Source: Guillardia theta CCMP2712 (taxonomy: Eukaryota > Protista > Cryptophyta). Taken from it: a stretch of 64,000 nt of DNA. The notes under the pieces were generated by a model. The model saw only the letters and a program-made list of their open reading frames with translations, was not told where the DNA came from and did not search any database. The stretch covers positions 73,413 to 137,412 of the forward strand of contig NW_005434570.1 of assembly GCF_000315625.1 (NCBI RefSeq), in the 5' to 3' direction. The translations under genes and the position numbers were made by a program. Below are positions 14,301 through 55,832 of the stretch, piece after piece (positions within the stretch are counted from its first letter, which is position 1; every line of letters begins with the position of its first letter).

Positions 14301-14927
14301 GGAGAAGGGACGAACTCCTGATCCTGGAAGGAATGTCAGACTTTCCCGTGCAGAGTAAGCACGCGTCTAGACGTGCCTGGACAGCACATAAGAACGCTCC
14401 CGTTCCTTCCATCTTGGACCTGAAGTTGGTATCCCAGCCTCATCAACCCAACAGCCCTCTCCACTGAAAGCTACTTCTCACCCATAGCATACACGCTTCC
14501 ACTCTGCGATCAGCCTGCCCTGCGATCAGACGCCAGGTAGGACATCACAGTCTCTGACCTCATTGGGAATGAAGCCTTCGCTCCTGTTGGTGCACATACT
14601 CCCCTCCTCTTCCTGCGAAGAAGTTACCTCTGCATCCCTTCCTTCCTCGCAGTCAGCACAGAAATCTCAGCGTCTTGCCATGGGTCTTCTTTTCCTCCCC
14701 GTGACTCCCATAACAATCGCTTTGCCTGCAGAGTGTCACAGGCATCAGTGCAAGCAAACGAGCAGAGAGGGAGAGACAACTTTCTAGTGACGCAAACGGA
14801 AGAAGGGGAGAAACGATAGGATTGGGAGGAAATGCAAGAGGGAGAGGGGGCGGGGAAGGAGACAGGCAGGCAGGCAGGAAGGCAGGCAGGAAGGCAGGCA
14901 GGCAAGCAGGAAGGCAGGAAGGCAGGA

Positions 14928-14971
<44 letters not shown>

Positions 14972-15011
14972 AGGCAGGCAGGCAGAAAGGCAGGAAGGCA
15001 GGAAGGCAGGA

Positions 15012-15046
<35 letters not shown>

Positions 15047-15566
15047 CAAGCAGGAAGGCAGGCAGGCAAGCAGGCAGGAAGGCAGGCAGGCAAGCAGGAA
15101 GGCAGGAAGGCAGGAAGGCAGGAAGGAAAGAGGGAGGGAGGGAGGGAGGGAGGAAACCTCTAGAGGACTACAGGCCTCGCTACTTTGTATCAATTTGAGC
15201 CTCTGCACAAATCTCTCAGCTGTCAGTTGAGAGCAACAAGACATTCCTGGTGGAGCGGCAGAACGACGGACTTTCCCGCTAGCCCACCACCGTCACAGCA
15301 GAGCGTTGCAAGAGAATGTACAAGAGTATACCTACTGAAGCTGCTCTGCCGACCATGGGCCTTATCCTGGCAGCCACCAGAATATGATAGCTTTCCTTCC
15401 CTCCACCTCCTCGGAGAGCAACTGTGCGGGTGAAGAAGGAGACTTCCCGGCCATGCTGACAGCAGCAGGCGGCTCGCATACAACGGCCCTCCTCCATCCT
15501 CGCGAAGCCTCCTACCGCCATCGCCATCCCCAAACCTAGCATGAGCTTGAGAAGCCCTCCCACCAT
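11390..15566 (-). CDS. Kinesin motor protein with N-terminal signal peptide and LRGG leader (3' end approximate)
   Basis: ILVAARIRP, AYGQTGSG|KTFTIFG, VEVYGDEIIDLL, MNLKSSRAH, LVDLGGAE, INLGLLAL, YVPYSNSKLTLLL; ATG 15566 MVGGLLKLMLGLGMAMAVGG. Confidence 0.85.
12070..12134. repeat. (GGA)n microsatellite, intronic
   Basis: Direct reading. Confidence 0.9.
14863..15125. repeat. (GGCA/GGAA)n tetranucleotide microsatellite in a kinesin intron
   Basis: ~260 bp of GGCA with GGAA interruptions. Confidence 0.95.
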
Positions 15567-15953
15567 TGTTAATCTGTGTTCCGCGAACACCGGCAGACCC
15601 GAAAGTGACTTTGCAACGAGGCACTGGCAGGATTCAGCCTCCGAGCGCCGCCCGGCCCGGCGGCCGGGCGGCCGGGCGGCAGGGAACGGCCCACGCCGGG
15701 TAGCTTGAACTGAGTCAGTGACGGTATCATTAAGGGGGCCAGCCAGCTTTAGGCGGCCATTCCCCCATCAGACTCTGAGTAGGCCATTCCTCCATCTGAC
15801 TATCAAAAATCAACGGTTCATGTCGATCACATGTCATCCTGATGACTGTAAGAACTATGAACAAACTTCTTTTCGTATCCCCCGAATACGCCCCACCACT
15901 ACTGTGGAGTGCTTTTAAGACATCTTCAGCTTCGTCCTCCACTGCTAACGTGT

Positions 15954-16455
15954 ATGCACATGACTTCAACACGCCTTCCTGCTCCTCCCTCCGTCCTCAT
16001 CCAAGCTCGCCCTCGTGCCTCCGACCAACGTGATCAGATCCGCCTGGACCTCCTCACCATCTCCTCCCTCTTCCACCTCCGACAGCTCGAGGCCGCTCGC
16101 ATCCTGGTAAGATGTCGCTTGCTGAGAGTGGAGGAGAGGCGGAGAGGTGGAGAAGAGAGAGGAGGGCAGGAGCTGACGGGGAGGGCAGGGGATCTCGCTG
16201 ACGTCCCTGAAGAGCGCGTGCCGGAGGCTGGGGGTCGAGCGATGGCCGTACACGCGGGAGGCAGTGCAGGAAGCTAAAGGAGTAGCTAGGGAAGAGGAGG
16301 GCACGGGGCAGGGATTGACAAGTGAAAAGCAAGGGCAAGACGCAGAGTTGGAAGCAGAAGAAGAGAGGGAGCACAGGTGGATGGATTGGTACCTGTCCTT
16401 TCCACTGGAAGAGACCTTAGAGGAAGGGGAAGGGGAGGTTAAGATGTCTCCATGA
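15954..16455 (+). CDS. RWP-RK domain protein, type A copy 1 (exons 15954-16106, 16189-16455)
   Basis: Spliced: ISSLFHLRQLEAARIL|GISLTSLKSACRRLGVERWPYTRE...WMDWYLSFP; GTAAG donor, CTGAC branch point, CAG acceptor; frame checked. Confidence 0.9.
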
Positions 16456-17602
16456 AGCATTCCCCTATCAATCGGGTTAACTTTCGACGCAAGTAAAGAA
16501 GATGACAAAGAGACATGCTGTAGCTCAATCTGCCACCGTGCGAAATCAAGCATCGTGATAGTACAACAGCTGCCTTACAAGCTGCGCAGCCTGCCTATGA
16601 TCACGAGCTGGAAGCGTCGATCCTCACTCACCCGCAACAAACGACATTCATGTGTTTGCATCCTCAGTTGTGCTGGAGTTCTCCTCTACCTACCTCTCAG
16701 CCTGTCAGCCGGTGGTTCCGACTGGCCCGGAGCTTCAAGGCTCCGGGATGAGATTGCTCACAGCAGCAGGAAGATCATCAGCGACAAGGACCGTCCGGAG
16801 GAAGTTAGATGACCAGCACGTATCTACAACCTCCTAGGTACTGGCCAGTGCGACATTTGGCCTTTGAATGAGACTAGACAGGAAGATAGCTGCGTATATG
16901 AAGACACTCATCCTTGACTCTACCGAGACATCCGCGAAATCACAAATACAACTATGACTAGCACAGGCTGACCTGTCAGCTGCTCTATCGTGAATGCTGA
17001 GAGATAGTCTCACCCAACACCCACCTGATCATATCCCGGCCTAGCACCTACTGGCTGACTACTTCCTGGTCAAGACATGGTTTGCTGATCCAGACCCTTT
17101 CCTTTCCCATGTGTACTCAGTCACTGCAATTTGGTTGTCTTGACATCTCACTGGGCTCCAGCCCACTGGGCGCATGCCCTCATGCAGTGAAGCGCATCCG
17201 ATCAGCTGCGGTGGACTTTGAAGACAGCGATGCTCGTCAGACCCTAGCAGCCAAGACATTCGTCCGCAAGTATCTCGGTGGAAGGGTTGACAATCTTCAA
17301 CCCTTCCACTTGCACTGCGTTGAGATGTCATTGGATTACTGTCAAGCTAGTTTGCCAAGAGTCCATGCCCTAGTTGTCCCCATGTTGACGACAGTTGTAT
17401 ATCCTGCCGTCGGCGTTGAGCTCCTATATCAAGGACGCGCGGTTTGTCGTCGGACCGGCAAGACAGCTGGCCACCCAATCACTTTGGTAGCCCAGATGAC
17501 TTTGCTTCTTCGCATGTACGACACCTGTCTCTGCCATGCTCTACAGGGCAGACGCTGTGGCGTTATTGTGTTGTCTCAGACCATGTAAGAGTAGAGTCTA
17601 TA

Positions 17603-18218
17603 CTACGAATATTTTACATTCCCAATGCTCCACGGATCGTTCACATCTTGATCGTGGGCGTCATTGTGGTGTGCGTCCCAACTGGGCTTGCGGGGATTGC
17701 CCTCAAATCCTTCGCCGTCCCAGCTAGAGGCCTTATCATCCACAGGAAACGACAGATACCAGTCCATCCACCCTCTCTCTATCTTACTCTCACTCGCTTG
17801 CTGCAAACCATATCCTTGCTCGCTCGGAGATGCTCCAAGTGCGGCGACGTCTGGCTCTGATCCTGTCACGTGTCGCGCAGGCGTTTCAAAGACATCTGTG
17901 CGGTCAGGAGATGTTGCATCCCGCGTGTACGGCCATCGCTCGACCCCCAGCCTCCGGCACGCGCTCTTCAGCGACGTCAGCGAGATCCCCTGCCCTCCCC
18001 GTCAGCTCCTGCCCTCCTCTTTGTTTCCCCTCCTCTCCTCCTCTCTCAGCAAGGGACATTCTTACCAGGATGCGAGCGGCCTCGACCTGTCGGAGGTGGA
18101 AGAGGGAGGAGATGGTGAGGAGGTCAAGGCGGATGTACCTGCGTTGGTCGGAGGCACGAGGGCGAGCTTGGATGAGGACGGAGGGTCCTGTAGCGTGAGG
18201 AGGCTGTTGTGTCGCCAT
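17603..18218 (-). CDS. RWP-RK domain protein, type B copy 1 (exons 18218-18066, 17989-17603)
   Basis: MATQQPPH...FHLRQVEAARIL|GISLTSLKSACRRLGVERWPYTRD...WMDWYLSFP; intact frame. Confidence 0.9.
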
Positions 18219-19053
18219 GGGACCTGTATGCTTGAGGGACTGATGGTACTGAGATGGGGTTTTGGAGACGGCAACGAGCAAGGTAGTGCTCTGGTGGAGC
18301 TATCAAGTGGGAGCACTTGCCAAGATTGGAGCGCCACCGTATACAAATCTCAACGTGCGACTGGGCTCTGATCAGAGCAGGGGCAAACAGACTCCGCCGG
18401 AGCCTTCGTGCATGATTTCCGCCGGAGCCTTCGTGCACGGACTGCTGTCCCCCAAACTTAACTGATACGGAGGCTTCACTTCCTCGCCTCTCCTGATTGT
18501 CCTCGTACTGATTTTTCACTTAACTTTGAGTAAAAGATTGCACCCGGACGGCGACGCGCGGCCCCCGGGCCCCCGGGGCTCCGAGGCCGCGTGCCACAGG
18601 CACGGTGACACATTGAAAAGAGTCTCGGTGTCCGGACCGTGACCCGGACTCCGGATCTAAAGCAGCGGCCCGGCCCTGCCAGTGACTCCGAAACCTGACC
18701 CGGAGAGGGCACTATCAAGTAACCGGGCCAGCCTTCAACTCAGTGGCGGTCACGGTAATATTAAGGGGGCCAGCCAGCTTTAGGTGGCCATTCCCCCATC
18801 AGACTCAGGCTGAGTGGGCCATTCCTCCATCTGACTATCAAAAATCAACGGTTCATGTTGACATGTCATCCTGATGACTGTAAGAAAGTAAGAAAGATGA
18901 ACAAACTTCTTTTCTTCATTTCATATCTCCCCGAATACGCCCCTCAGCCGCTACCGTGTCACGGGAGAAAGTTTGTTTGCTCCGGTTTGCACGTCTTTTT
19001 CAGTCAATAAAAGTTTAAGACATCTTCAGCTTCGTCCTCCACTGCTAACGTGT

Positions 19054-19545
19054 ATGCACATGACTTCAACACACCTTCCTGCTCCTCCCTCCGTCCTCAT
19101 CCAAGCTCGCCCTCGTGCCTCCGACCAACGTGATCAGATCCGCCTGGACCTCCTCACCATCTCCTCCCTCTTCCACCTCCGACAGCTCGAGGCCGCTCGC
19201 ATCCTGGTAAGATGTCGCTTGCTGAGAGAGGCGGAGAGGAGAGGACGAGAGGAGGGCAGGAGCTGACGGGGAGGGCAGGGGATCTCGCTGACGTCGCTGA
19301 AGAGCGCGTGCCGGAGGCTGGGGGTCGAGCGATGGCCGTACACGCGGGAGGCAGTGCAGGAAGCTAAAGGAGTAGCTAGGGAAGAGGAGGGCACGGGGCA
19401 GGGATTGACAAGTGAAAAGCAAGGGCAAGACGCAGAGTTGGAAGCAGAAGAAGAGAGGGAGCACAGGTGGATGGATTGGTACCTGTCCTTTCCACTGGAA
19501 GAGACCTTAGAGGAAGAGGAAGCGGAGGTTAAGATATCTCCATGA
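19054..19545 (+). CDS. RWP-RK protein A copy 2 (intron 19207-19278)
   Basis: Same structure as A1, intact RWP. Confidence 0.88.
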
Positions 19546-20949
19546 AGCATTCCCCTATCAATCGGGTTAACTTTCGACGCAAGTAAAGAAGATGACAAAG
19601 AGACATGCTGTAGCTCAATCTGCCACCGTGCGATATCAAGCATCGTGATAGTACAACAGCTGCCTTACAAGCTGCGCAGCCTGCCCATGATCACGAGCTG
19701 GAAGCGTCGATCTTCACTCACCCGCAACAAACGACATTGAAGTGTTTGCATCCTCAGTTGTGCTGGAGTTCTCCTCAACCTACCTCTCAGCCTGTCAGCC
19801 GGTGGTTCCGACTGGCCAAGGCTCCGGACTGAGGTTGCTCACAGCAGCAGGAAGATCATCAGCAACAAGGACCGTCCGGAGGAAGTTAGATGACCAGCAC
19901 GTATCTACAACCTCCTAGGTACTGGCCAGTACGACATTTGGCCTTTGATTGAGACTAGACAGGAAGATAGCTGAAGAGTATATGAAGACACTCATCCTTG
20001 ACTCTACTGAGACATCCGCGAAATCACAAATACAGCTGTGACTAGTACAGGCTGATTTGTCGGCTGTTCTGTCGTGAATGCTGAGAGATAGTCTCACCCA
20101 ACACCCACCTGACGATATCCCGGCCTAGCACCTACTGGCTGACTACTTCCTGGTCAAGACATGGTTTGCTGATCCAGACCCTTTCCTTTCCCATGTGTAC
20201 TCAGTCACTGCAATTTGGTTGTCTTGACATCTCCCTGGGCTCCAGCCCACTGGGCGCATGCCCTCATGCAGTGAAGCGCATCCGATCAGCTGCGGTGGAC
20301 TTTGAAGACAGCGGTGCTCGTCAGACCCCAGCAGCCAAGACATTCGTCCGCAAGTATCTCGGTGGAAGGGTTGACAATCTTCAACCCTTCCACTTGCACT
20401 GCGTTGAGGTGTCATTGGATTACTGTCAAGCTAGTTTGCCAAGAGTCCATGCCCTAGTTGTCCCCATGTTGACGACAGTTGTATATCCTGCCGTCGGCGT
20501 TGAGCTCCTATATCAAGGACGCGCGGTCTGTCGTCGGACCGGCAAGACAGCTGGCCACCCAATCACTTTGATAGCCCAGATGACTTTGCTTCTTCGCATG
20601 TACGATACCTGTCTCTGCCATGCTCTACAGGGCAGACGCTGTGGCGTTATTGTGTTGTCTCAGACCATGTAAGAGTAGAGTCTATACTACGAATATTTTA
20701 CATTCCCAATGCTCCACAGATCGTTCACATCTTGATCGTGGGCGTCATTGTGGTGTGCGTCCCAACTGGGCTTGCGGGGATTGCCCTCAAATCCTTCGCC
20801 GTCCCAGTTAGAGGCCTTATCATCCACAGGAAACGACAGATACCAGTCCATCCATCCTCTCTCTATCTTACTCTCACTCACTTGCTGCAAACCATATCCT
20901 TGCTCGCTCGGAGATGCTCCAAGTGCGGCGACGTCTGGCTCTGATCCTG

Positions 20950-21307
20950 TCACGTGTCGCGCAGGCGTTTCAAGGCAAAGAGATCTGTGCGGTCAGGAGA
21001 TGTTGCATCCCGCGTGTACGGCCATCGCTCGACCCCCAGCCTCCGGCACGCGCTCTTCAGCGACGTCAGCGAGATCCCCTGCCCTCCCCGTCAGCTCCTG
21101 CCCTCCTCTCCTCTCTGCCTCTCCGCTTCGGAGTCTCAGCAAGCGACATCTTACCAGGATGCGAGCGGCCTCGAGCTGTCGGAGGTGGAAGAGGGAGGAG
21201 ATGGTGAGGAGGTCCAGGCGGATGTACCTGCGTTGGTCGGAGGCACGAGGGCGAGCTTGGATGAGGACGGAGGGTCCTGTAGCGTGAGGAGGCTGTTGTG
21301 TCGCCAT
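20950..21307 (-). CDS. RWP-RK protein B copy 2, C-terminally truncated by a +5 nt frameshift
   Basis: TTTCAAGGCAAAGAG versus TTTCAAAGA in B1/B4/B5; reads ...RWPYTRDATSPDRTDLFALKRLRDT-stop. Confidence 0.8.
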
Positions 21308-22472
21308 GGGACCTGTATGCCAGGCTTGAGGGACTGATGGTACTGAGATGGGGGTTTGGAGACGGCAACGAGCAAGGTAGTGCTCTAGCGAAGCTATCAA
21401 GTGGGAGCACTCGCCAAGATTGGAGCGCCACCGTATACAAATCTCAACGTGCGACTGGGCTCTGATCAGAGCAGGGGCAAACAGACTCTTTATTGACTGA
21501 AAAAGAAAAAAGTGTTGAAGTTGAATCGACGCGAGAAGAGCCCTGCTTTACTACGCTAGTCGAGGAAAAGCTCTTTACTCAAAGTTAAGTTGAAGATCAG
21601 TACGAGGACAGCACTAGTTGAGAGGGGGAATAGCCCTCTGCAGCAAGTCCCGGAGGCCAGTCTTCCATGTCAGCATACTTGACTGAGTATCTTTACTGCC
21701 GGGCTCAATACAGTCACGGCGGCTTCCCTCCGGATCTCCGTCGAGATCGTGACAGTGACCGCCAAATGCTCCGACGCGACAGTCGTGAAGTTTTGACTTC
21801 TTGCTGTGACAGAGCAGCACAAGCCTTGAAGGCCGCTTTCAGGCTTCAAGTTCAATTCCAACTTCCGTTGGCGAGTCACAGCGCCGGGTCGCCGCCCGGC
21901 CGGAGTCCGGCGTGTCGGACTAGCCTGGCAACCAGGTCATTCAAGCCTTGATTGACCGGAGCGTCGGCGCCGCCGCAGGCCCCGGGGCTCGCCGGTGCCT
22001 CACGGTGCCACATTGAAACGCCCGGCCGCCGGTCCGATCAGGGTCGGCCCGGACTCAGTTAGGCTTGAAAGACCCGGATCAGGATAGACAGCCTGACTCG
22101 CCGGAATCTCGGACCCGCCGCCGAGAGACTCTGAGATGACCGGCCCGGCGGGCCGGGCCGCCGCCCGGCTGGCCGCGGCCGTTCCGGGCCCTGCCGCCAA
22201 GGTAACCTTGAACTCAGTGACGGTCACCTGCGGTATCATTAAGGGGGCCAGCCAGCTTTGGGCAGCCATTCCCCCATCAGACTCCAGGCTGAGTGGGCCA
22301 TTCCTCCATCTGACTGTCAAAAATCAACGGTTCACTGAGTCATGTCGACATGTCATCCTGATGACTCTAAGAACTATGAACAAACTTCTTTTCGTATCCC
22401 CCGAACACGCCCCTCCACTACTGTGGAGTGCTTTTAAGACATCTTCAGCTTCGTCCTCCACTGCTAACGTGT

Positions 22473-22996
22473 ATGCACATGACTTCGACACACCTTCCTG
22501 CTCCTCCCTCCGTCCTCATCCAAGCTCGCCCTCGTGCCTCCGACCAACGCAGGTACATCCGCCTGGACCTCCTCACCATTTCCTCCCTCTTCCACCTCCG
22601 ACAGCTCGAGGCCGCTCGCATCCTGGTAAGATGTCGCTTGCTGAGAGAGAAGGAGAAGCGGAGAGGCGGAGAGGCGGAATGGCGGAGAGGAGAGGACGAG
22701 AGGAGGGCAGGAGCTGACGGGGAGGGCAGGGGATCTCGCTGACGTCGCTGAAGAGCGCGTGCCGGAGGCTGGGGGTCGAGCAATGGCCGTACACGCGGGA
22801 GGCAGTGCAGGAAGCTAAAGGAGTAGCTAGGGAAGAGGAGGGCACGGGGCAGGGATTGACAAGTGAAAAGCAAGGGCAAGACGCGGAGATGGAAGCAGAA
22901 GAAGAGAGGGAGCACAGGTGGATGGATTGGTACCTTTCCTTTCCACTGGAAGAGACCTTAGAGGAAGGGGAAGGGGAGGTTAAGATATCTCCATGA
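22473..22996 (+). CDS. RWP-RK protein A copy 3 (QWP variant, B-type RRYIR patch; intron 22626-22729)
   Basis: CAA at 22781-22783 replaces the CGA Arg codon; frame intact. Confidence 0.85.
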
Positions 22997-24397
22997 GGTA
23001 TTCCCCTATCAATCGGGTTAACTTTCCACGCAAGTAAAGAAGAGGACAAAGAGACATGCTGTAGCTCAATCTGCCACCGTGCGATATCAAGCTTCGTGAT
23101 AGTACAACAGCTGCCTTACAAGCTGCGCAGCCTGCCTATGATCACGAGCTGGAAGCGTCGATCTTCACTCACCCGCAACAAACGACATTGAAGTGTTTGC
23201 ATCCTCAGTTGTGCTGGAGTTCTCCTCTACCTACCTCTCAGCCTGTCAGCCGGTGGTTCCGACTGGCCCGGAGCTTCAAGGCTCCGGACTGAGGTTGCTC
23301 ACAGCAGCAGGAAGATCATCAGCAACAAGGACCGTCCGAAGGGAAGTTAGATGACCAGCACGTATCTACAACCTCCTAGGTACTGGCCAGTGCGACATTT
23401 GGCCTTTGAATGAGACTAGACAGGAAGATAGCTGACAGGTATATGAAGACACTCATCCTTGACTCTACTGAGACATCCGCGAAATCACAAATACAGCTGT
23501 GACTAGTACAGGCTGACCTGTCGGCTGTTCTGTCGTGAATGCTGAGAGATAGTTTCACCCAACACCCACCTGACGATATCCCGGCCTAGCACCTACTGGC
23601 TGACTACTTCCTGGTCAAGACATGATTTGCTGATCCAGACCCTTTCCTTTCCCATGTGTACTCAGTCACTCTTGACATCTCCCTGGGCTCCAGCCCACTG
23701 GGCGCATGCCCTCATGCAGTGAAGCGCATCCGATCAGCTGCGGTGGACTTTGAAGACAGCGGTGCTCGTCAGACCTGAGCAGCCAAGACATTCGTCCGCA
23801 AGTATCTCGGTGGAAGGGTTGACAATCTTCAACCCTTCCACTTGCACTGCGTTGAGGTGTCATTGGATTACTGTCAAGCTAGTTTCCCAAGAGTCCATGC
23901 CCTAGTTGTCCCCATGTTGACGACAGTTGTATATCCTGCCGTCGGCGTTGAGCTCCTATATCAAGGACGCGCGGTCTGTCGTCGGACCGGCAAGACAGCT
24001 GGCCACCCAATCACTTTGATAGCCCAGATGACTTTGCTTCTTCGCATGTACGATACCTGTCTCTGCCATGCTCTACAGGGCAGACGCTGTGGCGTTATGG
24101 CGTTGAGTCAGACCATGTAAGAGTATAGTCTATACTACGAATATTTTACATTCCCAATGCTCCACAGATCGTTCACATCTTGATCATGGGCGTCATTGTG
24201 GTGTGCGTCCCAACTGGGCTTGCGGGGATTGCCCTCAAATCCTTCGCCGTCCCAGTTAGAGGCCTTATCATCCACAGGAAACGACAGATACCAGTCCATC
24301 CATCCTCTCTCTATCTTACTCTCACTCGCTTGCTGCAAACCATATCCTTGCTCGCTCGGAGATGCTCCAAGTGCGGCGACGTCTGGCTCTGATCCTG

Positions 24398-24755
24398 TCA
24401 CGTGTCGCGCAGGCGTTTCAAGGCAAAGAGATCTGTGCGGTCAGGAGATGTTGCATCCCGCGTGTACGGCCATCGCTCGACCCCCAGCCTCCGGCAAGCG
24501 CTCTTCAGCGACGTCAGCGAGATCCCCTGCCCTCCCCGTCAGCTCCTGCCCTCCTCTCCTCTCTGCCTCTCCGCTTCGGAGTCTCAGCAAGCGACATCTT
24601 ACCAGGATGCGAGCGGCCTCGACCTGTCGGAGGTGGAAGAGGGAGGAGATAGTGAGGAGGTCCAGGCGGATGTACCTGCGTTGGTCGGAGGCACGAGGGC
24701 GAGCTTGGATGAGGACGGAGGGTCCTGTAGCGTGAGGAGGCTGTTGTGTCGCCAT
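24398..24755 (-). CDS. RWP-RK protein B copy 3, same frameshift truncation as B2
   Basis: Same 5-nt insertion at ~24420; coordinates offset 3448 from B2. Confidence 0.8.
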
Positions 24756-25808
24756 GGGACCTGTATGCCAGGCTTGAGGGACTGATGGTACTGAGATGGG
24801 GGTTTGGAGACGGCAACGAGCAAGGTAGTGCTCTAGCGAAGCTATCAAGTGGGAGCACTCGCCAAGATTGGAGCGCCACCGTATACAAATCTCAACGTGC
24901 GACTGGGCTCTGATCAGAGCAGGGGCAAACAGACTCTTTATTGACTGAAAAAGAAAAAAGTGTTGAAGTTGAATCGACGCGAGAAGAGCCCTGCTTTACT
25001 ACGCTAGTCGAGGAAAAGCTCTTTACTCAAAGTTAAGTTGAAGATCAGTACGAGGACAGCACTAGTTGAGAGGGGGAATAGCCCTCTGCAGCAAGTCCCG
25101 GAGGCCAGTCTTCCATGTCAGCATACTTGACTGAGTATCTTTACTGCCGGGCTCAATACAGTCACGGCGGCTTCCCTCCGGATCTCCGTCGAGATCGTGA
25201 CAGTGACCGCCAAATGCTCCGACGCGACAGTCGTGAAGTTTTGACTTCTTGCTGTGACAGAGCAGCACAAGCCTTGAAGGCCGCTTTCAGGCTTCAAGTT
25301 CAATTCCAACTTCCGTTGTCACAGCGCCGGGTCGCCGCCCGGCCGGAGTCCGGCGGTGTCAAAGCCTGGCAACCGGGTCATTCAAGCCTTGATTGACCGG
25401 ACCGTCGGCGCCGCGGCCAGGCCCCGGGGCTCGCCGGTGGCCTGACTCGCCGGAACCTGACCCGCCGCCGAGAGACTCTGAGATGACCGGGCCGGGCCGC
25501 CGCCCGGCTGGCCGCGGCCGTTCCCTGCCGCCAAGGTAACCTTGAACTCAGTGACGGTCACCTGCGGTATCATTAAGGGGGCCAGCCAGCTTTGGGCGGC
25601 CATTCCCCCATCAGACTCCAGGCTGAGTGGGCCATTCCTCCATCTGACTGTCAAAAATCAACGGTTCACTGAGTCATGTCGACATGTCATCCTGATGACT
25701 CTAAGAACTATGAACAAACTTCTTTTCGTATCCCCCGAACACGCCCCTCCACTACTGTGGAGTGCTTTTAAAAGACATCTTCAGCTTCGTCCTCCACTGC
25801 TAACGTGT

Positions 25809-26340
25809 ATGCACATGACTTCGACACACCTTCCTGCTCCTCCCTCCGTCCTCATCCAAGCTCGCCCTCGTGCCTCCGACCAACGTGATCAGATCCGCCT
25901 GGACCTCCTCACTATCTCCTCCCTCTTCCACCTCCGACAGCTCGAGGCCGCTCGCATCCTGGTAAGATGTCGCTTGCTGAGAGAGGAGGAGAAGCGGAGA
26001 GGCGGAGAGGCGGAGAGGCGGAGAGGCGGAGAGGCGGAGAGGAAAGGAGGGCAGGAGCTGACGGGGAGGGCAGGGGATCTCGCTGACGTCGCTGAAGAGC
26101 GCGTGCCGGAGGCTGGGGGTCGAGCAATGGCCGTACACGCGGGAGGCAGTGCAGGAAGCTAAAGGAGTAGCTAGGGAAGAGGAGGGCACGGGGCAGGGAT
26201 TGACAAGTGAAAAGCAAGGGCAAGACGCAGAGTTGGAAGCAGAAGAAGAGAGGGAGCACAGGTGGATGGATTGGTACCTGTCCTTTCCACTGGAAGAGAC
26301 CTTAGAGGAAGGGGAAGCGGAGGTTAAGATATCTCCATGA
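25809..26340 (+). CDS. RWP-RK protein A copy 4 (QWP variant; intron 25962-26073)
   Basis: CAA at 26125-26127; frame intact. Confidence 0.85.
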
Positions 26341-27490
26341 GGTATTCCCCTATCAATCGGGTTAACTTTCCACGCAAGTAAAGAAGATGACAAAGAGACA
26401 TGCTGTAGCTCAATCTGCCACCGTGCGATATCAAGCATCGTGATAGTACAACAGCTGCCTTACAAGCTGCGCAGCCTGCCTATGATCACGAGCTGGAAGC
26501 GTCGATCTTCACTCACCCGCAACAAACGACATTGAAGTGTTTGCATCCTCAGTTGTGCTACAGTGCTCCTCTACCTACCTCTCAGCCTGTCAGCCGGTGG
26601 TTCCGACTGGCCCGGAGCTTCAAGGCTCCGGGATGAGATTGCTCATAGCAGCAGGAAGATCATCAGCAACAAGGACCGTCCGGAGGGAAGTTAGATGACC
26701 AGCACGTATCTACAACCTCCTAGGTACTGGCCAGTACGACATTTGGCCTTCGATTGAGACTAGACAGGAAGATAGCTGACAGGTATATGAAGACATTCAT
26801 CCTTGACTCTACTGAGACATCCGCGAAATCACAAATACAGCTGTGACTAGCACAGGCTGACCTGTCGGCTGTTCTGTCGTGAATGCTGAGAGATAGTCTC
26901 ACCCAACACCCACCTGACGATATCCCGGCCTAGCACCTACTGGCTGACTACTTCCTGGTCAAGACATGATTTGCTGATCCAGACCCTTTCCTTTCCCATG
27001 TGTACTCAGTCACTGCAATTTGGTTGTCTTGACATCTCCCTGGGCTCCAGCCCACTGGGCGCATGCCCTCATGCAGTGAAGCGCATCCGATCAGCTGCGG
27101 TGGACTTTGAAGACAGCGATGCTCGTCAGACCCCAGCAGCCAAGACATTCGTCCGCAAGTATCTCGGTGGAAGGGTTGACAATCTTCAACCCTTCCACTT
27201 GCACTGCGTTGAGGTGTCATTGGATTACTGTCAAGCTAGTTTCCCAAGAGTCCATGCCCTAGTTGTCCCCATGTTGACGACAGTTGTATATCCTGCCGTC
27301 GGCGTTGAGCTCCTATATCAAGGACGCGCGGTCTGTCGTCGGACCGGCAAGACAGCTGGCCACCCAATCACTTTGATAGCCCAGATGACTTTGCTTCTTC
27401 GCATGTACGATACCTGTCTCTGCCATGCTCTACAGGGCAGACGCTATGCGTCATGGCGTTGCCTCAGACCATGTAAGAGTAGAGTCTATA

Positions 27491-28102
27491 CTACGAATAT
27501 TTTACATGCCCAATGCTCCACGGATCGTTCACATCTTGATCGTGGGCGTCATTGTGGTGTGCGTCCCAACTGGGCTTGCGGGGATTGCCCTCAAATCCTT
27601 CGCCGTCCCAGCTAGAGGCCTTATCATCCACAGGAAACGACAGATACCAGTCCATCCACCCTCTATCTATCTTACTCTCACTCGCTTGCTGCAAACCATA
27701 TCCTTGCTCGCTCGGAGATGCTCCAAGTGCGGCGACGTCTGGCTCTGATCCTGTCACGTGTCGCGCAGGCGTTTCAAAGAGATCTGTGCGGTCAGGAGAT
27801 GTTGCATCCCGCGTGTACGGCCATCGCTCGACCCCCAGCCTCCGGCACGCGCTCTTCAGCGACGTCAGCGAGATCCCCTGCCCTCCCCGTCAGCTCCTGC
27901 CGTCCTCTCTTCTCTGCCTCTCCGCCTCTCTCAGCAAGCGACATCTTACCAGGATGCGAGCGGCCTCGAGCTGTCGGAGGTGGAAGAGGGAGGAGATGGT
28001 GAGGAGGTCCAGGCGGATGTACCTGCGTTGGTCGGAGGCACGAGGGCGAGCTTGGATGAGGACGGAGGGTCCTGTAGCGTGAGGAGGCTGTTGTGTCGCC
28101 AT
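27491..28102 (-). CDS. RWP-RK protein B copy 4, full length
   Basis: Exon 2 starts at 27877, in frame with ORF 27491-27757. Confidence 0.88.
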
Positions 28103-29220
28103 TGGCCCTGTATGCTTGAGGGACTGATGGTACTGAGATGGGGGTTTGGAGACGGCAACGAGCAAGGTAGTGCTCTGGTGGAGCTATCAAGTGGGAGCAC
28201 TTGCCAAGATTGGAGCGCCACCGTATACAAATCTCAACGTGCGACTGGGCTCTGATCAGAGCAGGGGCAAACATACTCTTTATTGACTGAAAAAGAAAAA
28301 AGTGTTGAGGTTGAATCGATGCGAGAAGAGCCCTGCTTTACTACGCTAGTCGAGGAAAAGCTCTTTACTCAAAGTTAAGTTAAAGATCAGTACGAGGACA
28401 GCACTAGTTGAGAGGGGGAATAGCCCTCTGCAGCAAGTCCCGGAGGCCAGTCTTCCATGTCAGCATACTTGACTGAGTATCTTTACTGCCGCGGGCTCAA
28501 TACAGTCATCACGATCTCGACGGAGATCCGGAGGGAAGCCGCCGTGAGAGCGGCCTTCAAGGCTTGTGCTGCTCTCAGGCTGTCACAGGCTTCAAGTTCA
28601 ATGCCAACTTCCGTTGTCACAGCGCCGGGTCGCCGCCCGGCCGGAGTCCGGCGTGTCAGACTAGCCTGGCAACCGGGTCATTCAAGCCTTGATTGACCGG
28701 ACCGTACGGTCGGCGCCGCCAGGCCCCGGGGCTTGCCGGTGCCTCACGGCGGTGGGCCACATTGAAACGCCCGGCCGCCGGTCCGATCAGGGTCGGCCCG
28801 GACTCCGGGACTCAGCCTTAGGCTTGAAAGACCCGGATCAGGATAGACAGCCTGACTCGCCGGAACCTCGGACCCGCCGCCGAGAGACTCTGAGATGACC
28901 GGGCCGGGCCGCCGCCCGGCTGGCCGCGGCCGTTCCCTGCCGCCAAGGTAACCTTGAACTCAGTGACGGTCACCTGCGGTATCATTAAGGGGGCCAGCCA
29001 GCTTTGGGCGGCCATTCCCCCATCAGACTCCAGGCTGAGTGGGCCATTCCTCCATCTGACTGTCAAAAATCAACGGTTCACTGAGTCATGTCGACATGTC
29101 ATCCTGATGACTCTAAGAACTATGAACAAACTTCTTTTCGTATCCCCCGAACACGCCCCTCCACTACTGTGGAGTGCTTTTAAAAGACATCTTCAGCTTC
29201 GTCCTCCACTGCTAACGTGT

Positions 29221-29752
29221 ATGCACATGACTTCGACACACCTTCCTGCTCCTCCCTCCGTCCTCATCCAAGCTCGCCCTCGTGCCTCCGACCAACGTGA
29301 TCAGATCCGCCTGGACCTCCTCACTATCTCCTCCCTCTTCCACCTCCGACAGCTCGAGGCCGCTCGCATCCTGGTAAGATGTCGCTTGCTGAGAGAGGAG
29401 GAGAAGCGGAGAGGCGGAAAGGCGGAGAGGCAGAGAGGCGGAGAGGAGAGGACGAGAGGAGGGCAGGAGCTGACGGGGAGGGCAGGGGATCTCGCTGACG
29501 TCGCTGAAGAGCGCGTGCCGGAGGCTGGGGGTCGAGCGATGGCCGTACACGCGGGAGGCAGTGCAGGAAGCTAAAGGAGTAGCTAGGGAAGAGGAGGGCA
29601 CGGGGCAGGGATTGACAAGTGAAAAGCAAGGGCAAGACGCAGAGTTGGAAGCAGAAGAAGAGAGGGAGCACAGGTGGATGGATTGGTACCTTTCCTTTCC
29701 ACTGGAAGAGACCTTAGAGGAAGGGGAAGCGGAGGTTAAGATATCTCCATGA
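29221..29752 (+). CDS. RWP-RK protein A copy 5 (intron 29374-29485)
   Basis: Intact RWP, frame checked. Confidence 0.88.
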
Positions 29753-30902
29753 AGCATTCCCCTATCAATCGGGTTAACTTTCCACGCAAGTAAAGAAGAT
29801 GACAAAGAGACATGCTGTAGCTCAATCTGCCACCGTGCGATATCAAGCATCGTGATAGTACAACAGCTGCCTTACAAGCTGCGCAGCCTGCCTATGATCA
29901 CGAGCTGGAAGCGTCGATCTTCACTCACCCGCAACAAACGACATTGAAGTGTTTGCATCCTCAGTTGTGCTACAGTGCTCCTCTACCTACCTCTCAGCCT
30001 GTCAGCCGGTGGTTCCGACTGGCCCGGAGCTTCAAGGCTCCGGGATGAGATTGCTCATAGCAGCAGGAAGATCATCAGCAACAAGGACCGTCCGGAGGGA
30101 AGTTAGATGACCAGCACGTATCTACAACCTCCTAGGTACTGGCCAGTACGACATTTGGCCTTCGATTGAGACTAGACAGGAAGATAGCTGACAGATGTCT
30201 GAAGACATTCATCCTTGACTCTACTGAGACATCCGCGAAATCACAAATACAGCTGTGACTAGCACAGGCTGACCTGTCGGCTGTTCTGTCGTGAATGCTG
30301 AGAGATAGTTTCACACAACACCCACCTGACGATATCCCGGCCTAGCACCTACTGGCTGACTACTTCCTGGTCAAGACATGATTTGCTGATCCAGACCCTT
30401 TCCTTTCCCATGTGTACTCAGTCACTGCAATTTGGTTGTCTTGACATCTCCCTGGGCTCCAGCCCACTGGGCGCATGCCCTCATGCAGTGAAGCGCATCC
30501 GATCAGCTGCGGTGGACTTTGAAGACAGCGATGCTCGTCAGACCCCAGCAGCCAAGACATTCGTCCGCAAGTATCTCGGTGGAAGGGTTGACAATCTTCA
30601 ACCCTTCCACTTGCACTGCGTTGAGGTGTCATTGGATTACTGTCAAGCTAGTTTCCCAAGAGTCCATGCCCTAGTTGTCCCCATGTTGACGACAGTTGTA
30701 TATCCTGCCGTCGGCGTTGAGCTCCTATACCAAGGACGCGCGGTCTGTCGTCGGACCGGCAAGACAGCTGGCCACCCAATCACTTTGATAGCCCAGATGA
30801 CTTTGCTTCTTCGCATGTACGATACCTGTCTCTGCCATGCTCTACAGGGCAGACGCTGTGCGTTATTGTGTTGTCTCAGACCATGTAAGAGTAGAGTCTA
30901 TA

Positions 30903-31514
30903 CTACGAATATTTTACATGCCCAATGCTCCACAGATCGTTCACATCTTGATCATGGGCGTCATTGTGGTGTGCGTCCCAACTGGGCTTGCGGGGATTGC
31001 CCTCAAATCCTTCGCCGTCCCAGCTAGAGGCCTTATCATCCACAGGAAACGACAGATACCAGTCCATCCATCCTCTATCTATCTTACTCTCACTCGCTTG
31101 CTGCAAACCATATCCTTGCTCGCTCGGAGATGCTCCAAGTGCGGCGACGTCTGGCTCTGATCCTGTCACGTGTCGCGCAGGCGTTTCAAAGAGATCTGTG
31201 CGGTCAGGAGATGTTGCATCCCGCGTGTACGGCCATCGCTCGACCCCCAGCCTCCGGCACGCGCTCTTCAGCGACGTCAGCGAGATCCCCTGCCCTCCCC
31301 GTCAGCTCCTGCCCTCCTCTCTTCTCTGCCTCTCCGCCTCTCTCAGCAAGCGACATCTTACCAGGATGCGAGCGGCCTCGACCTGTCGGAGGTGGAAGAG
31401 GGAGGAGATAGTGAGGAGGTCCAGGCGGATGTACCTGCGTTGGTCGGAGGCACGAGGGCGAGCTTGGATGAGGACGGAGGGTCCTGTAGCGTGAGGAGGC
31501 TGTTGTGTCGCCAT
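30903..31514 (-). CDS. RWP-RK protein B copy 5, full length
   Basis: Offset 3412 from B4, no frameshift. Confidence 0.88.
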
Positions 31515-32776
31515 GGAACCTGTATGCTTGAGGGGCTGATGGTACTGAGATGGGGGTTTGGAGACGGCAACGAGCAAAGAAGTGCTCTGGCGAAGCTATC
31601 AAGTGGGAGCACTTGCCAAGAACGGAGCGCCACCGTATACAAATCTCAACGTGCGACTGGGTTCTGATCGGAGCAGGGGCAAAATGTGGCCGTTAAAGTT
31701 GAATCGATGCGAGAAGAGCCCTGCTAAGTTACTACACGAGTCACTGAGTCGAGGAACAGCACTAGTTGAGAGGGGGAATAGCCCTCTGCAGCAAGTCCCG
31801 GAGGCCAGTCTTCCATGTCAGCATACGTAGTATCTTTACTGCCGGGCTCAATACAGTCACGGCGGCTTCCCTCCGGATCTCCGTCGAGATCGTGACAGTG
31901 ACCGCCAAATGCTCCGACGCAACAGTCGTAAAGTTTTGACTTCTTGCTGTGACCTTTACTCAAAATTAAGGAGGCTGAGTTGAGGAGGCTTGACCCTGAC
32001 ACTGTCGCACAGGCCACACTTGCGAGGCCCGGCTGAGGCCGAGAGGCGGCCCGGGCCCATCCGGGAGTCCACAGGCTGACTCGGCCGCCGCCGCTACCGT
32101 CACACATTTCCTTGTTCCCCGTGCGATCCGCCAGCTAAGTGACAAAACTTGAAAAGCCCAACGCATCATCGGGCCGGGCCTGCAAGAGTTTATCACTGCT
32201 GGCGATGATCGGATACTACGGAACAAGCATTCAGGATGTTTGGCCGCATCGGATGATGCCAGGGGAAGAAGCACTGCCAGGCTTCCGTGGCAGCTGGCAC
32301 TCCCGAGTCCCGGTCCGCACCCCGGGGCTAGATTCTTACTGCCATTTCGGAAACCGCCCCGGCCCGGGCCCCCCCCGCCCCCCCCGCCCCTGCCACGGGA
32401 CTCCGGGACCCGGTGACCGTTAGATGGGCCCGGCCGGCCGTCCGCCGGCCCGATCAGGGCCTGGCACTGAGGCCCACTCCCGCGCGGGCCGCGCCGACTT
32501 CCTGACGTACGGTACACGGCGTACTAGTGCGTACGGTACACGGCGTACTAGTGGGGCTCGCTCGCCTCAGGGCCCGCGGGCCCTGGGCTGGCCCTGGGCC
32601 GCCCTGCGGGGCCCGGCCCCCCCAGCGGCCGGGCTGAAGGGCCTCAGCTCAGTGCGGCGGCCCGGCCGGCCGCAGTGAAACTAATGCCAGGCAGCACCGT
32701 GACAAATTAGCGGCTAGACGGGGCCATCAAGTCAAAGTGAAGTGTAGCGGCATGTTGGGGCCATGAACCTATCGCC

Positions 32777-34830
32777 ATGGCTCGAGAGAAGGCGCTTGCT
32801 CCTGCCACGAGTACCATGAGCCAGGAATCGAAGGTTGACAGGGTTGCCACAACGACAGAAGTTCGGGTGGTGGAGGAGGAAGTGGACGAGACTGGAGTGA
32901 CGATCCGAATTTCGAGGAGGGGAGACGTGGAGTTGGATGAAACCCTGCTAACAGACTCGGACGAGGACAAGGAAAGACGATCGGAAGAAGATGAAAGGTG
33001 GAGCAGGGCGCCATGGCTTCATGGGAGCGCTACCTTGACGCAGTTCGTGAAGCCAACAACCAAGGCAAGAGCCAATCTACAGCCTGCCCCTCCTCCGGAG
33101 CTCAAGGATGTTGAGACCTCAGATGAGCTCGACATCAGCCAGGATCTAGCAGAGCAGGAAGATAGGAACACAAGGCTGCAGCGTCACAGTCGCATCTGGT
33201 CGGTGCAGGATGAGCTGGGATTTCTTGAGGAGCAAGAAAGACCGCCAGCTATCAGCTTCCTCCGACCGTCAACAGCACGCCAGGTTGCGAGTCTGATCTT
33301 GTTTGTGGCCATGTCGATGCTTCTTTCCCTGGCTCTGTTCCTCTCCGCGATCTGGTTCCTGTAAGTTGCTAAGGATTGCTGTAACCTCGCGGACCGTCGG
33401 TAAGGGGATGTGCAGGATCAACCAGAGGGGAGAGGAGAAGTATTCCTTCTTCTGCATAGCGGGCATCTTGATTTCAGTCACGTTCCCACTGATAAGCATC
33501 TCGATGCATTGCCATGTAAGGCATCAAAATTCATCCTCCTCTCCTCATGCTGCCCAACTTCAGGTGATGCAGTGGAAAAGCAGCATGCAGGGTTTCAACC
33601 TGCTGGTCCTCGCCATGGTCCATGTCCATGCGATCTGCTATGACAGAAGTCTCAAGGGTGTCTTGCTCGCAGATTCCAATCTACCACCTCGAGATCATCA
33701 TCGGGACCTTTGTCCCGTCCTTCATTGTACACTTCACCTTCGCCGCACCTTCTCTTGACTTCGCTCTTACAGAGGTTCCTGGAGGTTATCAGCGGCGCGT
33801 GCGAGGCCATCTGCTACGCCTCCTTCCTGTCTCTCACCCTGCCGGCCATGAGAATTCGCTTCTCAGTCCGGGAGAGAAAGAACCATGACATCGAGAGGCT
33901 GCCTTACGACCCCCTGTCCCAGCTGCCCATCGCATGGTATCTTTCTGCGCTGGTACTGGTTGCGTTTCCCCTTCTTACTAGGCTGATCTTGTGTACAGTG
34001 GCCTCTGATCCGACTGGCTTCAGTCCTGTACGCAGCTGTCAAGCAACGAAAGTATGAAATCGTGGTCAGAGCATCCTTTCCGATCGCTTCAAGCTGTGAT
34101 GGTTCTACAGCACCTGCTGCCCATGTTGTCGAGCGTCTGCCTTTTAATCACAACTTTCTCCTTTGTCCTGCAGAACCAACAAGTCCTGCAGCTGCTTCCT
34201 TGCACCGCCAGGGTTGTGCCCAAAGGCGCTTCTTTGCTGGTCAGAAGCTCTCGGGAACGTGACCTTGTTGTTTTGCCTGATGTGAGATCGCCAGGCACTG
34301 ATTCTGCTGAGCTCAATCAACCGAGACGGCCTGTTCACTCTGACACATTTCAAGATGTTCCCTGTTAGCGCAGGGGAGGACGAGGCCACAGGCTGGTCGA
34401 AACGTTACCTGCTCGTCCAATCTGTTGTCTGCCTCGTGACCGGTGGGCCTCTTCCCCCTCCTTCGTTCCCTCGCTCCCTCGCTTCTCCCTCTTGCGCTCC
34501 TCCTTTGCTGACTGAAGGGTGTCCAGTCTATCCCCTCGCGGCTTCCTTCTCCTACATGGACTTCCTGGCACTGGACAGGGTCCCACAGCAACGGCCAAAG
34601 AGAACACAGAGGCAGCGGCTGAGGAGGAGGAGCAGTTTGATTCGATGAGGCAACCATTGGCAATCTTTTCAAAATCTTTCTTGTACACATGTAACATCCT
34701 GATTTCTCAACAAACTGACAGAACATCGCTCTCCTCACATGATAGCGCACATCTCCTAACCGACAACAGCGTACAACAGCTTCTCTGCCTCCTTCTCTTA
34801 CTGCCCGAGCCCCGGCAGCCAGCCCAGTAG
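32777..34830 (+). CDS. Multi-pass membrane protein, TMEM184/Ost-alpha-like (approximate)
   Basis: Acidic N-terminus followed by several hydrophobic exons; FLEVISGACEAICYASFLSL resembles the CYEA..FL motif of the solute-transporter-alpha family. Confidence 0.45.
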
Positions 34831-55732: not shown

Positions 55733-55832
55733 NNNNNNNNNNNNNNNNNNNNNNNNNNNNNNNNNNNNNNNNNNNNNNNNNNNNNNNNNNNNNNNNNNNN
55801 NNNNNNNNNNNNNNNNNNNNNNNNNNNNNNNN
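55733..55832. other. Assembly gap (100 N) inside a TCC/CCA microsatellite
   Basis: N run. Confidence 0.99.

What the first reader, a model, noticed from the sequence alone, without database searches (positions are those of the whole stretch)
15705..31952. Hidden cassette array of ten RWP-RK transcription-factor genes in five convergent pairs
Seen: five tandem units, each with a + strand gene (A) and a - strand gene (B). After removing one GT-AG intron both encode LFHLRQxEAARILGISLTSLKSACRRLGVERWPYTR, so the domain is invisible in the ORF track. Established: this fits the RWP-RK DNA-binding domain pattern (NIN/NLP, RKD, Chlamydomonas MID). Short RWP-RK proteins without PB1/GAF domains control gamete or mating-type fate in green lineages. 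Inference: an amplified two-gene regulatory module, possibly dosage-based or switch-like and linked to nitrogen response or sexual differentiation in a cryptophyte. I know of no description of this paired, tandem-inverted arrangement.
Basis: partly seen in the sequence, partly recalled or inferred. Interest (0 to 1): 0.9.

Follow-up and report, generated by a model that had tools for sequence, protein, structure and literature searches.

The report
Tandem array of paired RWP-RK genes
The cryptophyte alga Guillardia theta carries five tandem copies of a two-gene unit encoding small RWP-RK transcription factors; the array is real, but it is one of dozens in a genome with hundreds of RWP-RK genes, and its role is unknown.

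Summary
Window 15729-31953 is five tandem units of 3.1-3.4 kb. Each has a + strand gene A (139 aa) and a convergent - strand gene B (179 aa). Both are split by one GTAAGA...CTGAC...GGGCAG intron inside the RWP-RK domain. The spliced domain hits Pfam PF02042 at 56.9 bits (cut-off 29.3).

The genome is Guillardia theta CCMP2712. My spliced B4 is identical to the public model GUITHDRAFT_117053 (UniProt: RWP-RK domain-containing protein). I found no public model for the other nine.

An RNA run shows polyadenylated sense transcripts from several distinct A copies and essentially none from B. No junction read was recovered. B2 and B3 are truncated by a shared 5-nt insertion, and A3 and A4 read QWPY instead of RWPY.

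The array is not unique. The genome has at least 150 RWP-RK loci above threshold (571 candidates), about two thirds clustered and many in opposite-strand pairs. The scan's first readers noted other RWP-RK arrays elsewhere in this genome.

An older A/B-like convergent pair on another contig has arms homogenised within that locus, which indicates gene conversion. The family shares a conserved C-terminal W-x-x-W-Y helix.

Nothing tested links the array to nitrogen response or sex.

Verdict: a real, mostly unannotated instance of a large cryptophyte RWP-RK expansion, of moderate interest.

The parts
15729..31953 (.). Tandem array of five units. Units start at 15729, 18760, 22238, 25572 and 28984. 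Each unit runs: A promoter region, gene A (+), a 1.14-kb array-specific intergenic stretch, gene B (-), then a variable spacer of 0.54-0.93 kb.
15954..16455 (+). Gene A1, 139 aa. Exon 1 is 15954-16106, the intron 16107-16188 (82 nt), and exon 2 is 16189-16455 including the stop. It carries RWPYTR and a W-M-D-W-Y-L-S-F-P motif at 16378-16404.
16511..16513 (+). Poly(A) addition site of A transcripts, about 55 nt after the stop codon.
   Evidence: table 7: 7+7 reads with A-runs behind 16511 and 16513. Sense-strand depth reaches 59 in 16305-16504.
17603..18218 (-). Gene B1, 179 aa. Exon 1 is 18218-18066, the intron 18065-17990 (76 nt), and exon 2 is 17989-17603 including the stop. The motif lies at 17744-17770.
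19054..19545 (+). Gene A2, 139 aa. The intron is 19207-19278 (72 nt, with an in-frame TGA).
20950..21307 (-). Gene B2, truncated to 93 aa. The intron is 21079-21154. A 5-nt insertion within 20972-20978 shifts the frame just after the RWP-RK domain. The tail motif is still readable out of frame at 20828-20854.
22473..22996 (+). Gene A3, 139 aa. The intron is 22626-22729 (104 nt). It has QWPY in place of RWPY, and a B-type 7-nt patch at 22550-22556 (RY in place of DQ) that looks like a gene-conversion tract.
24398..24755 (-). Gene B3, truncated to 93 aa by the same 5-nt insertion (within 24420-24426). The intron is 24527-24602.
25809..26340 (+). Gene A4, 139 aa. The intron is 25962-26073 (112 nt). 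It has QWPY.
27491..28102 (-). Gene B4, 179 aa. The intron is 27878-27949 (72 nt). The spliced product is identical to the public protein GUITHDRAFT_117053 / EKX36755.1 / UniProt L1ILT1.
29221..29752 (+). Gene A5, 139 aa. The intron is 29374-29485 (112 nt).
30903..31514 (-). Gene B5, 179 aa. The intron is 31290-31361 (72 nt).

Best explanation
The locus is a recent fivefold tandem amplification of an older convergent two-gene module in Guillardia theta CCMP2712. The module encodes minimal RWP-RK transcription factors of a subfamily seen so far only in the cryptophytes Guillardia and Hanusia and in unnamed environmental or transcriptome sequences.

Shown:
- A (139 aa) and B (179 aa) share an N-terminal module that is almost the same in both. 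It is predicted to be a beta-hairpin plus a three-helix RWP-RK helix-turn-helix, spanning residues about 12-74 (this fold is an AlphaFold2 prediction, not an experimental structure).
- After this module they have unrelated acidic tails.
- Both tails contain one conserved short helix, W-M-D-W-Y-L-S-F-P.
- The shared 5' arms (exon 1, intron and the first 70 nt of exon 2) are kept alike between the inverted partners by gene conversion, while the tails diverge.
- In the one culture sample examined, several A copies are transcribed and polyadenylated and B is silent.
- B2 and B3 are truncated, and A3 and A4 carry R-to-Q in the signature motif.

Inferred:
- The proteins bind DNA through the RWP-RK module, with the same specificity for A and B.
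- The aromatic/acidic tail helix acts as an activation or partner-binding motif.
- The array arose and is remodelled by unequal crossing-over. This is part of a genome-wide expansion of RWP-RK genes, not a one-off device.
For: - Array anatomy.
- Pfam PF02042: 56.9 bits for the spliced A domain and 53.1 bits for B4 with no other domain.
- Intron: identical splice signals in all ten copies. The introns differ in length (72-112 nt), partly through different numbers of 8-nt GGCGGAGA-type units, and the exons stay in frame.
- Independent support for the splice: the public model P0001 equals my spliced B4. The paralog model P0002 splices at the same point. Transcriptome-derived Hanusia phi proteins have the domain contiguous.
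- Transcription: sense reads and poly(A) ends for A. Copy-specific variants appear in the RNA: 16241 G>A in 7/19 reads (the QWPY copies), 16344/16348 in 18-19 of about 115 reads (A3), 16395 in 13/44 and 16486 in 24/57. At least three distinct A copies are therefore expressed in a study independent of the assembly.
- Selection: 11 nonsynonymous against 10 synonymous variable sites, where 76% nonsynonymous is expected. One-sided p = 0.015; pN/pS is about 0.4.
- Gene conversion: A and B arms differ at 3 or fewer of 186 sites outside one 7-nt block. A3 carries the B-type block, and site 105 is polymorphic in both gene types. The C42 pair has arms 96.6% identical to each other but only 80-81% identical to the C104 arms, although C42(+) has a B-like tail.
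- Family architecture and motif: alignments A1 and A2. In the AlphaFold2 model, mean pLDDT per 10-residue block is 84-96 across residues 11-70, and the block holding helix 123-130 averages 81.
- Genome-wide expansion.
Against: - No splice-junction read was recovered. Exon 1 depth was only about 2.5 in a 3'-biased library of 60-nt reads.
- B genes showed no RNA at all in that run. Two older transcriptome runs held no A or B contigs.
- Only one of the ten genes is in the public protein sets, so most models are mine.
- The selection test rests on 21 sites and ignores mutation bias and conversion.
- DNA binding, activation and nuclear localisation are untested.
- Copy number rests on the one assembly. 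The DNA run that holds the region is probably the assembly's own data.
Confidence: 0.8

Rival explanations
1. The array is a neutral by-product of segmental duplication and is now decaying. Only one or a few copies matter, and the rest are on the way to becoming pseudogenes. It is not a dosage or switch device.
For: B2 and B3 are truncated by a shared frameshift. A3 and A4 have lost the signature Arg. B transcripts are absent. Copies are only 1-8% diverged, so selection has had little time to act. The genome is full of similar arrays, which suggests a high duplication rate.
Against: There is an excess of synonymous over nonsynonymous variable sites (p = 0.015). Eight of the ten reading frames are intact, and all ten copies have intact splice signals. 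Several A copies are transcribed, including the QWPY ones. The tail motif is conserved in paralogs only 40-55% identical.
Confidence: 0.25
2. The A/B pair is a switch-like regulatory module for gamete or mating-type fate or for nitrogen response, analogous to MID/VSR1 or RKD/NLP. B would be induced only in a sexual or starved stage, and the array would provide dosage.
For: Short RWP-RK factors control gametic differentiation in the green lineage. They act as homo- and heterodimers (VSR1-VSR1 and MID-VSR1; PMC10629530). A and B share one DNA-binding module but have different tails. They show opposite expression states in vegetative culture: A is on and B is off.
Against: No orthology to MID, VSR1, RKD or NLP has been shown. 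There is no expression series. The homodimer prediction gave no verdict. With hundreds of paralogs in similar arrays, this locus has no special claim to such a role. No sexual cycle is described for G. theta (from my own knowledge).
Confidence: 0.1
3. The five units are an assembly artefact, that is, an over-expansion of one or two real copies.
For: The units are 92-99% identical. The only DNA runs holding the region come from one 2011 study of the same strain and are probably the assembly's own data.
Against: The units differ by unit-specific indels: intron lengths of 72, 82, 104 and 112 nt, different spacer lengths and a 5-nt insertion. They also differ by substitutions. An independent 2026 RNA run carries at least three distinct A haplotypes at roughly copy-proportional frequencies. 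There is no gap (N run) inside the array.
Confidence: 0.04
4. The unit is, or is carried by, a mobile element.
For: The spacers contain a dispersed repeat of about 55 nt with at least 944 candidate copies in the genome. The RWP-RK family is very large.
Against: The 1.08-kb core between A and B occurs only five times in the genome, all in this array. No transposase or other Pfam domain is present. Apart from the two shared gene arms, which face each other inside every unit, the 25 longest of the 48 inverted pairs listed show no other inverted repeat that could frame the array. The related pairs on C42 and C76 share only the genes.
Confidence: 0.03

Closest known systems
Other annotated RWP-RK genes and arrays of Guillardia theta CCMP2712 (for example GUITHDRAFT_121454 on C229, and the nine consecutive genes EKX44892-EKX44900)
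   Same: They share the Pfam domain and the short size (130-190 aa). They have the same layout of N-terminal basic strand, RWP-RK domain, acidic linker and W-x-x-W-Y motif. They are also arranged in tandem or inverted arrays.
   Different: This array is built from a two-gene convergent unit with two tail types (A and B). The domain is split by an intron, and nine of its ten genes have no public model that I could find.
Chlamydomonas/Volvox MID and VSR1 (RWP-RK regulators of mating type and sex; PMC10629530)
   Same: They are RWP-RK transcription factors without PB1 or GAF domains. The idea of two RWP-RK proteins cooperating or competing is shared. MID is a similarly small protein (from my own knowledge).
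   Different: No orthology has been shown. The MID and VSR1 dimerisation domains are volvocine-specific and are absent here. The W-x-x-W-Y tail helix is not reported for them in what I read. MID is single-copy and sex-linked (from my own knowledge), whereas this is a fivefold array within a family of hundreds.
Plant RKD proteins (egg-cell and gametophyte RWP-RK factors)
   Same: They have a minimal architecture of an RWP-RK domain plus variable regions (from my own knowledge).
   Different: This subfamily comes from a different lineage and has its own intron position and C-terminal motif. Its function is untested.
NIN / NIN-like proteins (NLP)
   Same: They share the RWP-RK DNA-binding domain.
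   Different: NLPs carry a GAF-like N-terminal region and a C-terminal PB1 domain. Pfam finds neither in B4.

Membership tests
RWP-RK domain family (Pfam PF02042) | Match to the Pfam model above the gathering score (29.3 bits) | tested here: met
   The spliced A domain scores 56.9 bits, E 1.9e-15. Exon 2 alone scores 33.3 bits (A) and 32.5 bits (B). Full-length B4 scores 53.1 bits.
RWP-RK domain family (Pfam PF02042) | Signature R-W-P-x-R-K motif | tested here: inconclusive
   Eight copies read RWPYTR: RWP is kept and RK is replaced by TR. A3 and A4 read QWPYTR. Paralogs read RWPYQR, RWPYKR and RWPYRR. The HMM still matches, but the literal motif is degenerate.
RWP-RK domain family (Pfam PF02042) | Helix-turn-helix-like DNA-binding fold | tested here: inconclusive
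   The AlphaFold2 model gives strands 13-17 and 28-32 and helices 33-37, 44-51 and 55-64 at high confidence (mean pLDDT per 10-residue block 84-96 across residues 11-70). No solved relative was found by sequence. Foldseek found nothing at E<=0.001 and gave only weak RpiR-, Hin- and Fis-type HTH rows.
RWP-RK domain family (Pfam PF02042) | Sequence-specific DNA binding and transcriptional regulation | not testable with these tools
   This needs DAP-seq, EMSA or reporter assays.
NLP subfamily | GAF-like N-terminal region and C-terminal PB1 domain | tested here: not met
   Pfam finds only PF02042 in B4 (179 aa) and in P0002.
RKD/MID-type minimal RWP-RK factors | Short protein with RWP-RK as the only recognised domain | tested here: met
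   A is 139 aa and B is 179 aa, with a single Pfam domain.
RKD/MID-type minimal RWP-RK factors | Orthology to, or a clade with, MID, VSR1 or RKD | not tested
   At E<=1e-5, the relatives that carry an organism name are all Guillardia or Hanusia; one further hit, from a Logan assembly, is unnamed. No tree with green-lineage sequences was built.
RKD/MID-type minimal RWP-RK factors | Gamete-, sex- or nitrogen-starvation-specific expression | not testable with these tools
   Only one RNA run could be laid. Its culture condition is unknown.

The most novel reading that the evidence does not exclude
A and B form a two-state regulatory pair. Gene conversion keeps one DNA-binding module identical in both partners, so they compete for the same sites. 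Their different tails give different outputs, and the truncated B2 and B3 act as tail-less competitors. A is on and B is off in vegetative cells, and B is induced in an as yet undescribed sexual or nutrient-triggered stage of the cryptophyte. This array would be one of many such pairs in what may be the largest RWP-RK complement of any sequenced eukaryote.
Probability: 0.1. Interest if true: 0.8.

Novelty: new variant of a known kind. Interest (0 to 1): 0.45.

Why it matters
RWP-RK factors are master regulators of gamete identity and nitrate signalling in the green lineage. Cryptophytes have no described sex-determination system.

Three points make the finding useful:
- G. theta holds several hundred RWP-RK loci, against 15 Nin-like genes in Chlamydomonas and 56 reported for Rhodomonas salina. 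Many carry a shared, undescribed C-terminal W-x-x-W-Y helix, which gives a defined family to test.
- Nine of the ten genes here are missing from the public protein sets because the domain is intron-split. Published counts of transcription factors for this model cryptophyte are therefore probably too low.
- Inverted pairs whose DNA-binding arms are homogenised while their tails diverge offer a clean natural case for studying concerted evolution of a domain.

None of this shows a function yet.

Tried and rejected
- Homolog search with A exon 2 (88 aa): no hit among proteins of 48-154 aa. No A model is therefore on record in that size range.
- The look-up of encoding contigs for P0001: nothing on record. 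Records of the window's own genome may be left out of that look-up.
- Splice junction as a DNA pattern: 0 matches in JGI metagenome contigs and 0 in the organism's own genome with up to 2 mismatches. There is neither an environmental transcript nor a processed copy.
Coverage of exon 1 was too low to decide.
- Homodimer prediction for B4: 'no answer', score 0.07. This is not evidence either way.
- PDB sequence search: no relative.
- Foldseek against PDB: nothing at E<=0.001.
- Rfam on 14000-34000: nothing.
- The 195-200-codon open frame in the A-B intergenic stretch: no Pfam hit, no RNA, broken in unit 3. Rejected as a gene.
- Mobile-element origin: rejected, because the unit core occurs only in this array.
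- Literature: no paper in the searchable library describes the G. theta RWP-RK expansion or this locus. Curtis et al. 2012 and its supplement were not in the library, so I could not check them.


Full report
**Observation**

The repeat search finds five direct copies of every segment between about 15.8 and 31.9 kb, spaced 3084-3461 nt apart and 92-99% identical. It also finds 141-267-nt inverted arms between + and - strand segments. A conserved anchor places the unit starts at 15729, 18760, 22238, 25572 and 28984. Similarity between spacers stops at about 31953, and the stretch upstream of 15729 is unrelated.

Six-frame translation finds ten copies of GISLTSLKSACRRLGVE[R/Q]WPYTR, five on each strand.

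**Gene models**

- Each A gene has a 153-nt exon 1, an intron of 72-112 nt and a 267-nt exon 2. It encodes 139 aa.
- Each B gene has a 153-nt exon 1, an intron of 72-76 nt and a 387-nt exon 2. It encodes 179 aa.
- All ten introns begin GTAAGA, carry CTGAC about 14 nt before the end and end GGGCAG.
- Seven of the ten intron lengths are not multiples of three. The other three contain an in-frame TGA.
- The A introns differ in length, partly through different numbers of GGCGGAGA-type 8-nt units, while the flanking exons stay aligned and in frame.
- Three things support the splice independently. My spliced B4 is letter-for-letter the public protein GUITHDRAFT_117053 / EKX36755.1 / UniProt L1ILT1. 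The paralog GUITHDRAFT_121454 is spliced at the same point. Transcriptome-derived proteins of the sister genus Hanusia phi have the domain uninterrupted.

**Identity of the genome and the domain**

The genome is Guillardia theta CCMP2712, at 87.1 Mb in 669 contigs, and the window is C104:73413-137412.

The spliced A domain scores 56.9 bits against PF02042 (cut-off 29.3). Exon 2 alone already passes at 33 bits. Full-length B4 scores 53.1 bits and has no other Pfam domain.

The genes are therefore minimal RWP-RK proteins, not NLPs. The literal RK of the signature motif is TR here.

**State of the ten copies**

- A3 and A4 have CGA changed to CAA, giving QWPY.
- B2 and B3 share a 5-nt insertion just after the domain. 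It stops the protein at 93 aa, and the tail is still readable out of frame.
- The remaining six copies are intact.
- Across the intact copies there are 11 nonsynonymous and 10 synonymous variable sites, where 76% nonsynonymous would be expected under neutrality. The one-sided p is 0.015 and pN/pS is about 0.4. This is a modest sign of constraint from few sites.

**Expression**

One call of read laying was available.

- An RNA run from 2026 and a different study gives sense-strand coverage of A, up to depth 59 over the 3' end. Poly(A) tails start at 16511 and 16513.
- The same run gives essentially nothing over B, at depth 0-0.24.
- Copy-specific letters appear in the RNA: 16241 G>A in 7/19 reads (the QWPY copies), 16344/16348 in about 16% of reads (A3), 16395 in 13/44 and 16486 in 24/57. 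At least three different A copies are therefore transcribed.
- These variants also show, independently of the assembly, that several distinct copies exist.
- No junction rows were reported. Exon 1 depth was about 2.5 in this 3'-biased library of 60-nt reads, so the test is uninformative.
- Two older transcriptome runs held only a dispersed repeat from the spacers.

**Context in the genome**

- PF02042 searched in six frames gives 571 first-look candidates. All 150 that were scored are above the cut-off, at 49.5 bits or more.
- By my hand count, about 100 of those 150 lie within 10 kb of another hit. At least 15 loci have opposite-strand neighbours.
- A protein search with A exon 2 gives 148 matches. 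Many extend through the tail motif.
- NCBI already names nine consecutive genes of another array as RWP-RK domain-containing proteins.
- The scan's first readers noted several other RWP-RK arrays in this genome.
- In contrast, only B4 of this array is in the protein collections.
- I found no paper that describes the expansion. A Rhodomonas salina preprint mentions 56 RWP-RK genes, and a survey of algal transcription factors lists 15 Nin-like genes for Chlamydomonas.

**Age of the pair, and gene conversion**

The closest paralogs are on C42, C76, C229 and C13. They have the same intron position and the same W-[LM]-[DEN]-[WL]-Y-[LM]-S-F-P motif.

C42 holds a convergent pair whose + copy has a B-like tail (PDRT..., DD.AS.W.G.GFE.N). 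Its two arms are 96.6% identical to each other over 321 nt but only 80-81% identical to the C104 arms. The arms therefore group by locus while the tails group by type. This pattern indicates concerted evolution.

Inside the array, A and B arms differ at 3 or fewer of 186 sites apart from one 7-nt block. A3 carries the B-type block, and site 105 is polymorphic in both gene types.

**Protein architecture**

A profile of exon 2 translations finds 423 representatives at E<=0.001. Those I looked up are from G. theta, Hanusia phi, an MMETSP transcriptome or unnamed environmental and Logan assemblies.

An alignment of 34 of them shows four elements:
- a basic V-x-V-x-x-R-x-R strand;
- the RWP-RK core;
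- a variable acidic linker;
- a near-terminal W-[ILMV]-x-W-Y-[MLV] followed by acidic residues.

AlphaFold2 with this alignment models a beta-hairpin plus three helices, with mean pLDDT per 10-residue block of 84-96 across residues 11-70. It also models an isolated helix at 123-130, in a block averaging 81, and the rest is disordered.

I infer that the tail helix, aromatic and set in an acidic context, is an activation or partner-binding motif. This is not tested. No solved relative or significant fold match was found, and the homodimer prediction gave no verdict.

**Other contents of the unit**

The 1.14-kb stretch between A and B occurs only in this array. It has no Pfam hit and no RNA. The spacers between B and the next A vary in length and hold a dispersed repeat of about 55 nt with at least 944 candidate copies in the genome. 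Nothing suggests a mobile element or an RNA gene.

**Verdict**

The array and the domain assignment are confirmed. Four of the ten copies are altered, B is silent where tested, and the proposed link to nitrogen or sex is only an analogy with MID/VSR1, RKD and NLP.

The features I could not find described are these:
- the subfamily architecture, with its tail helix;
- arm-restricted gene conversion in inverted pairs;
- the scale of the expansion;
- the gap in public annotation.

I rate the finding as a new variant of a known kind, of moderate interest.

Noticed in passing
window 18481-18536 (also 21574-21610): A dispersed repeat of about 55 nt is 95-98% identical at 944 or more candidate loci in the genome. 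A partner piece (window 18440-18481) often lies in inverted orientation about 100 nt away, which looks MITE-like. The repeat also sits inside many transcript contigs at high depth.
   Followed up: partly
window 14785-15172: A long 8-nt microsatellite, seen as more than 30 overlapping copies of a 144-nt register, lies just upstream of the array. It gives AGRQ/CLPA-type repeat reading frames on both strands.
   Followed up: no
window 15757-15800 and the same place in units 2-5: Two direct copies of GGCCATTCC[C/T]CCATC[A/T]GACT lie about 160-200 nt upstream of every A start codon. They are conserved in all five units and could be a cis-element.
   Followed up: no
window 17001-17585 (+) and the homologous places: An open frame of 195-200 codons lies in the A-B intergenic stretch. 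It is open in units 1, 2, 4 and 5 and broken in unit 3. It has no Pfam hit and no RNA coverage, and it is probably not a gene.
   Followed up: yes
G000:C9:533053-534256: Three RWP-RK domain matches lie close together. Two of them fall in open frames of 548 aa, which suggests a multi-RWP-RK protein.
   Followed up: no
Public paralog model P0009 (GUITHDRAFT_111328) and the ENA protein P0015: These models read straight through the intron at the same L|G position inside the RWP-RK domain. They therefore appear to be mis-spliced annotations.
   Followed up: no
L002 (G000:C76:120500-129500), 3867-4118 (-) and 5206-5478 (+): This is a divergent pair of near-identical RWP-RK genes of the same subfamily, 93.5% identical over 508 nt. 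It is an inverted duplication of the whole gene, not of the arm only.
   Followed up: partly
window 55733-55832: A run of 100 N marks an assembly gap, well outside the array.
   Followed up: no
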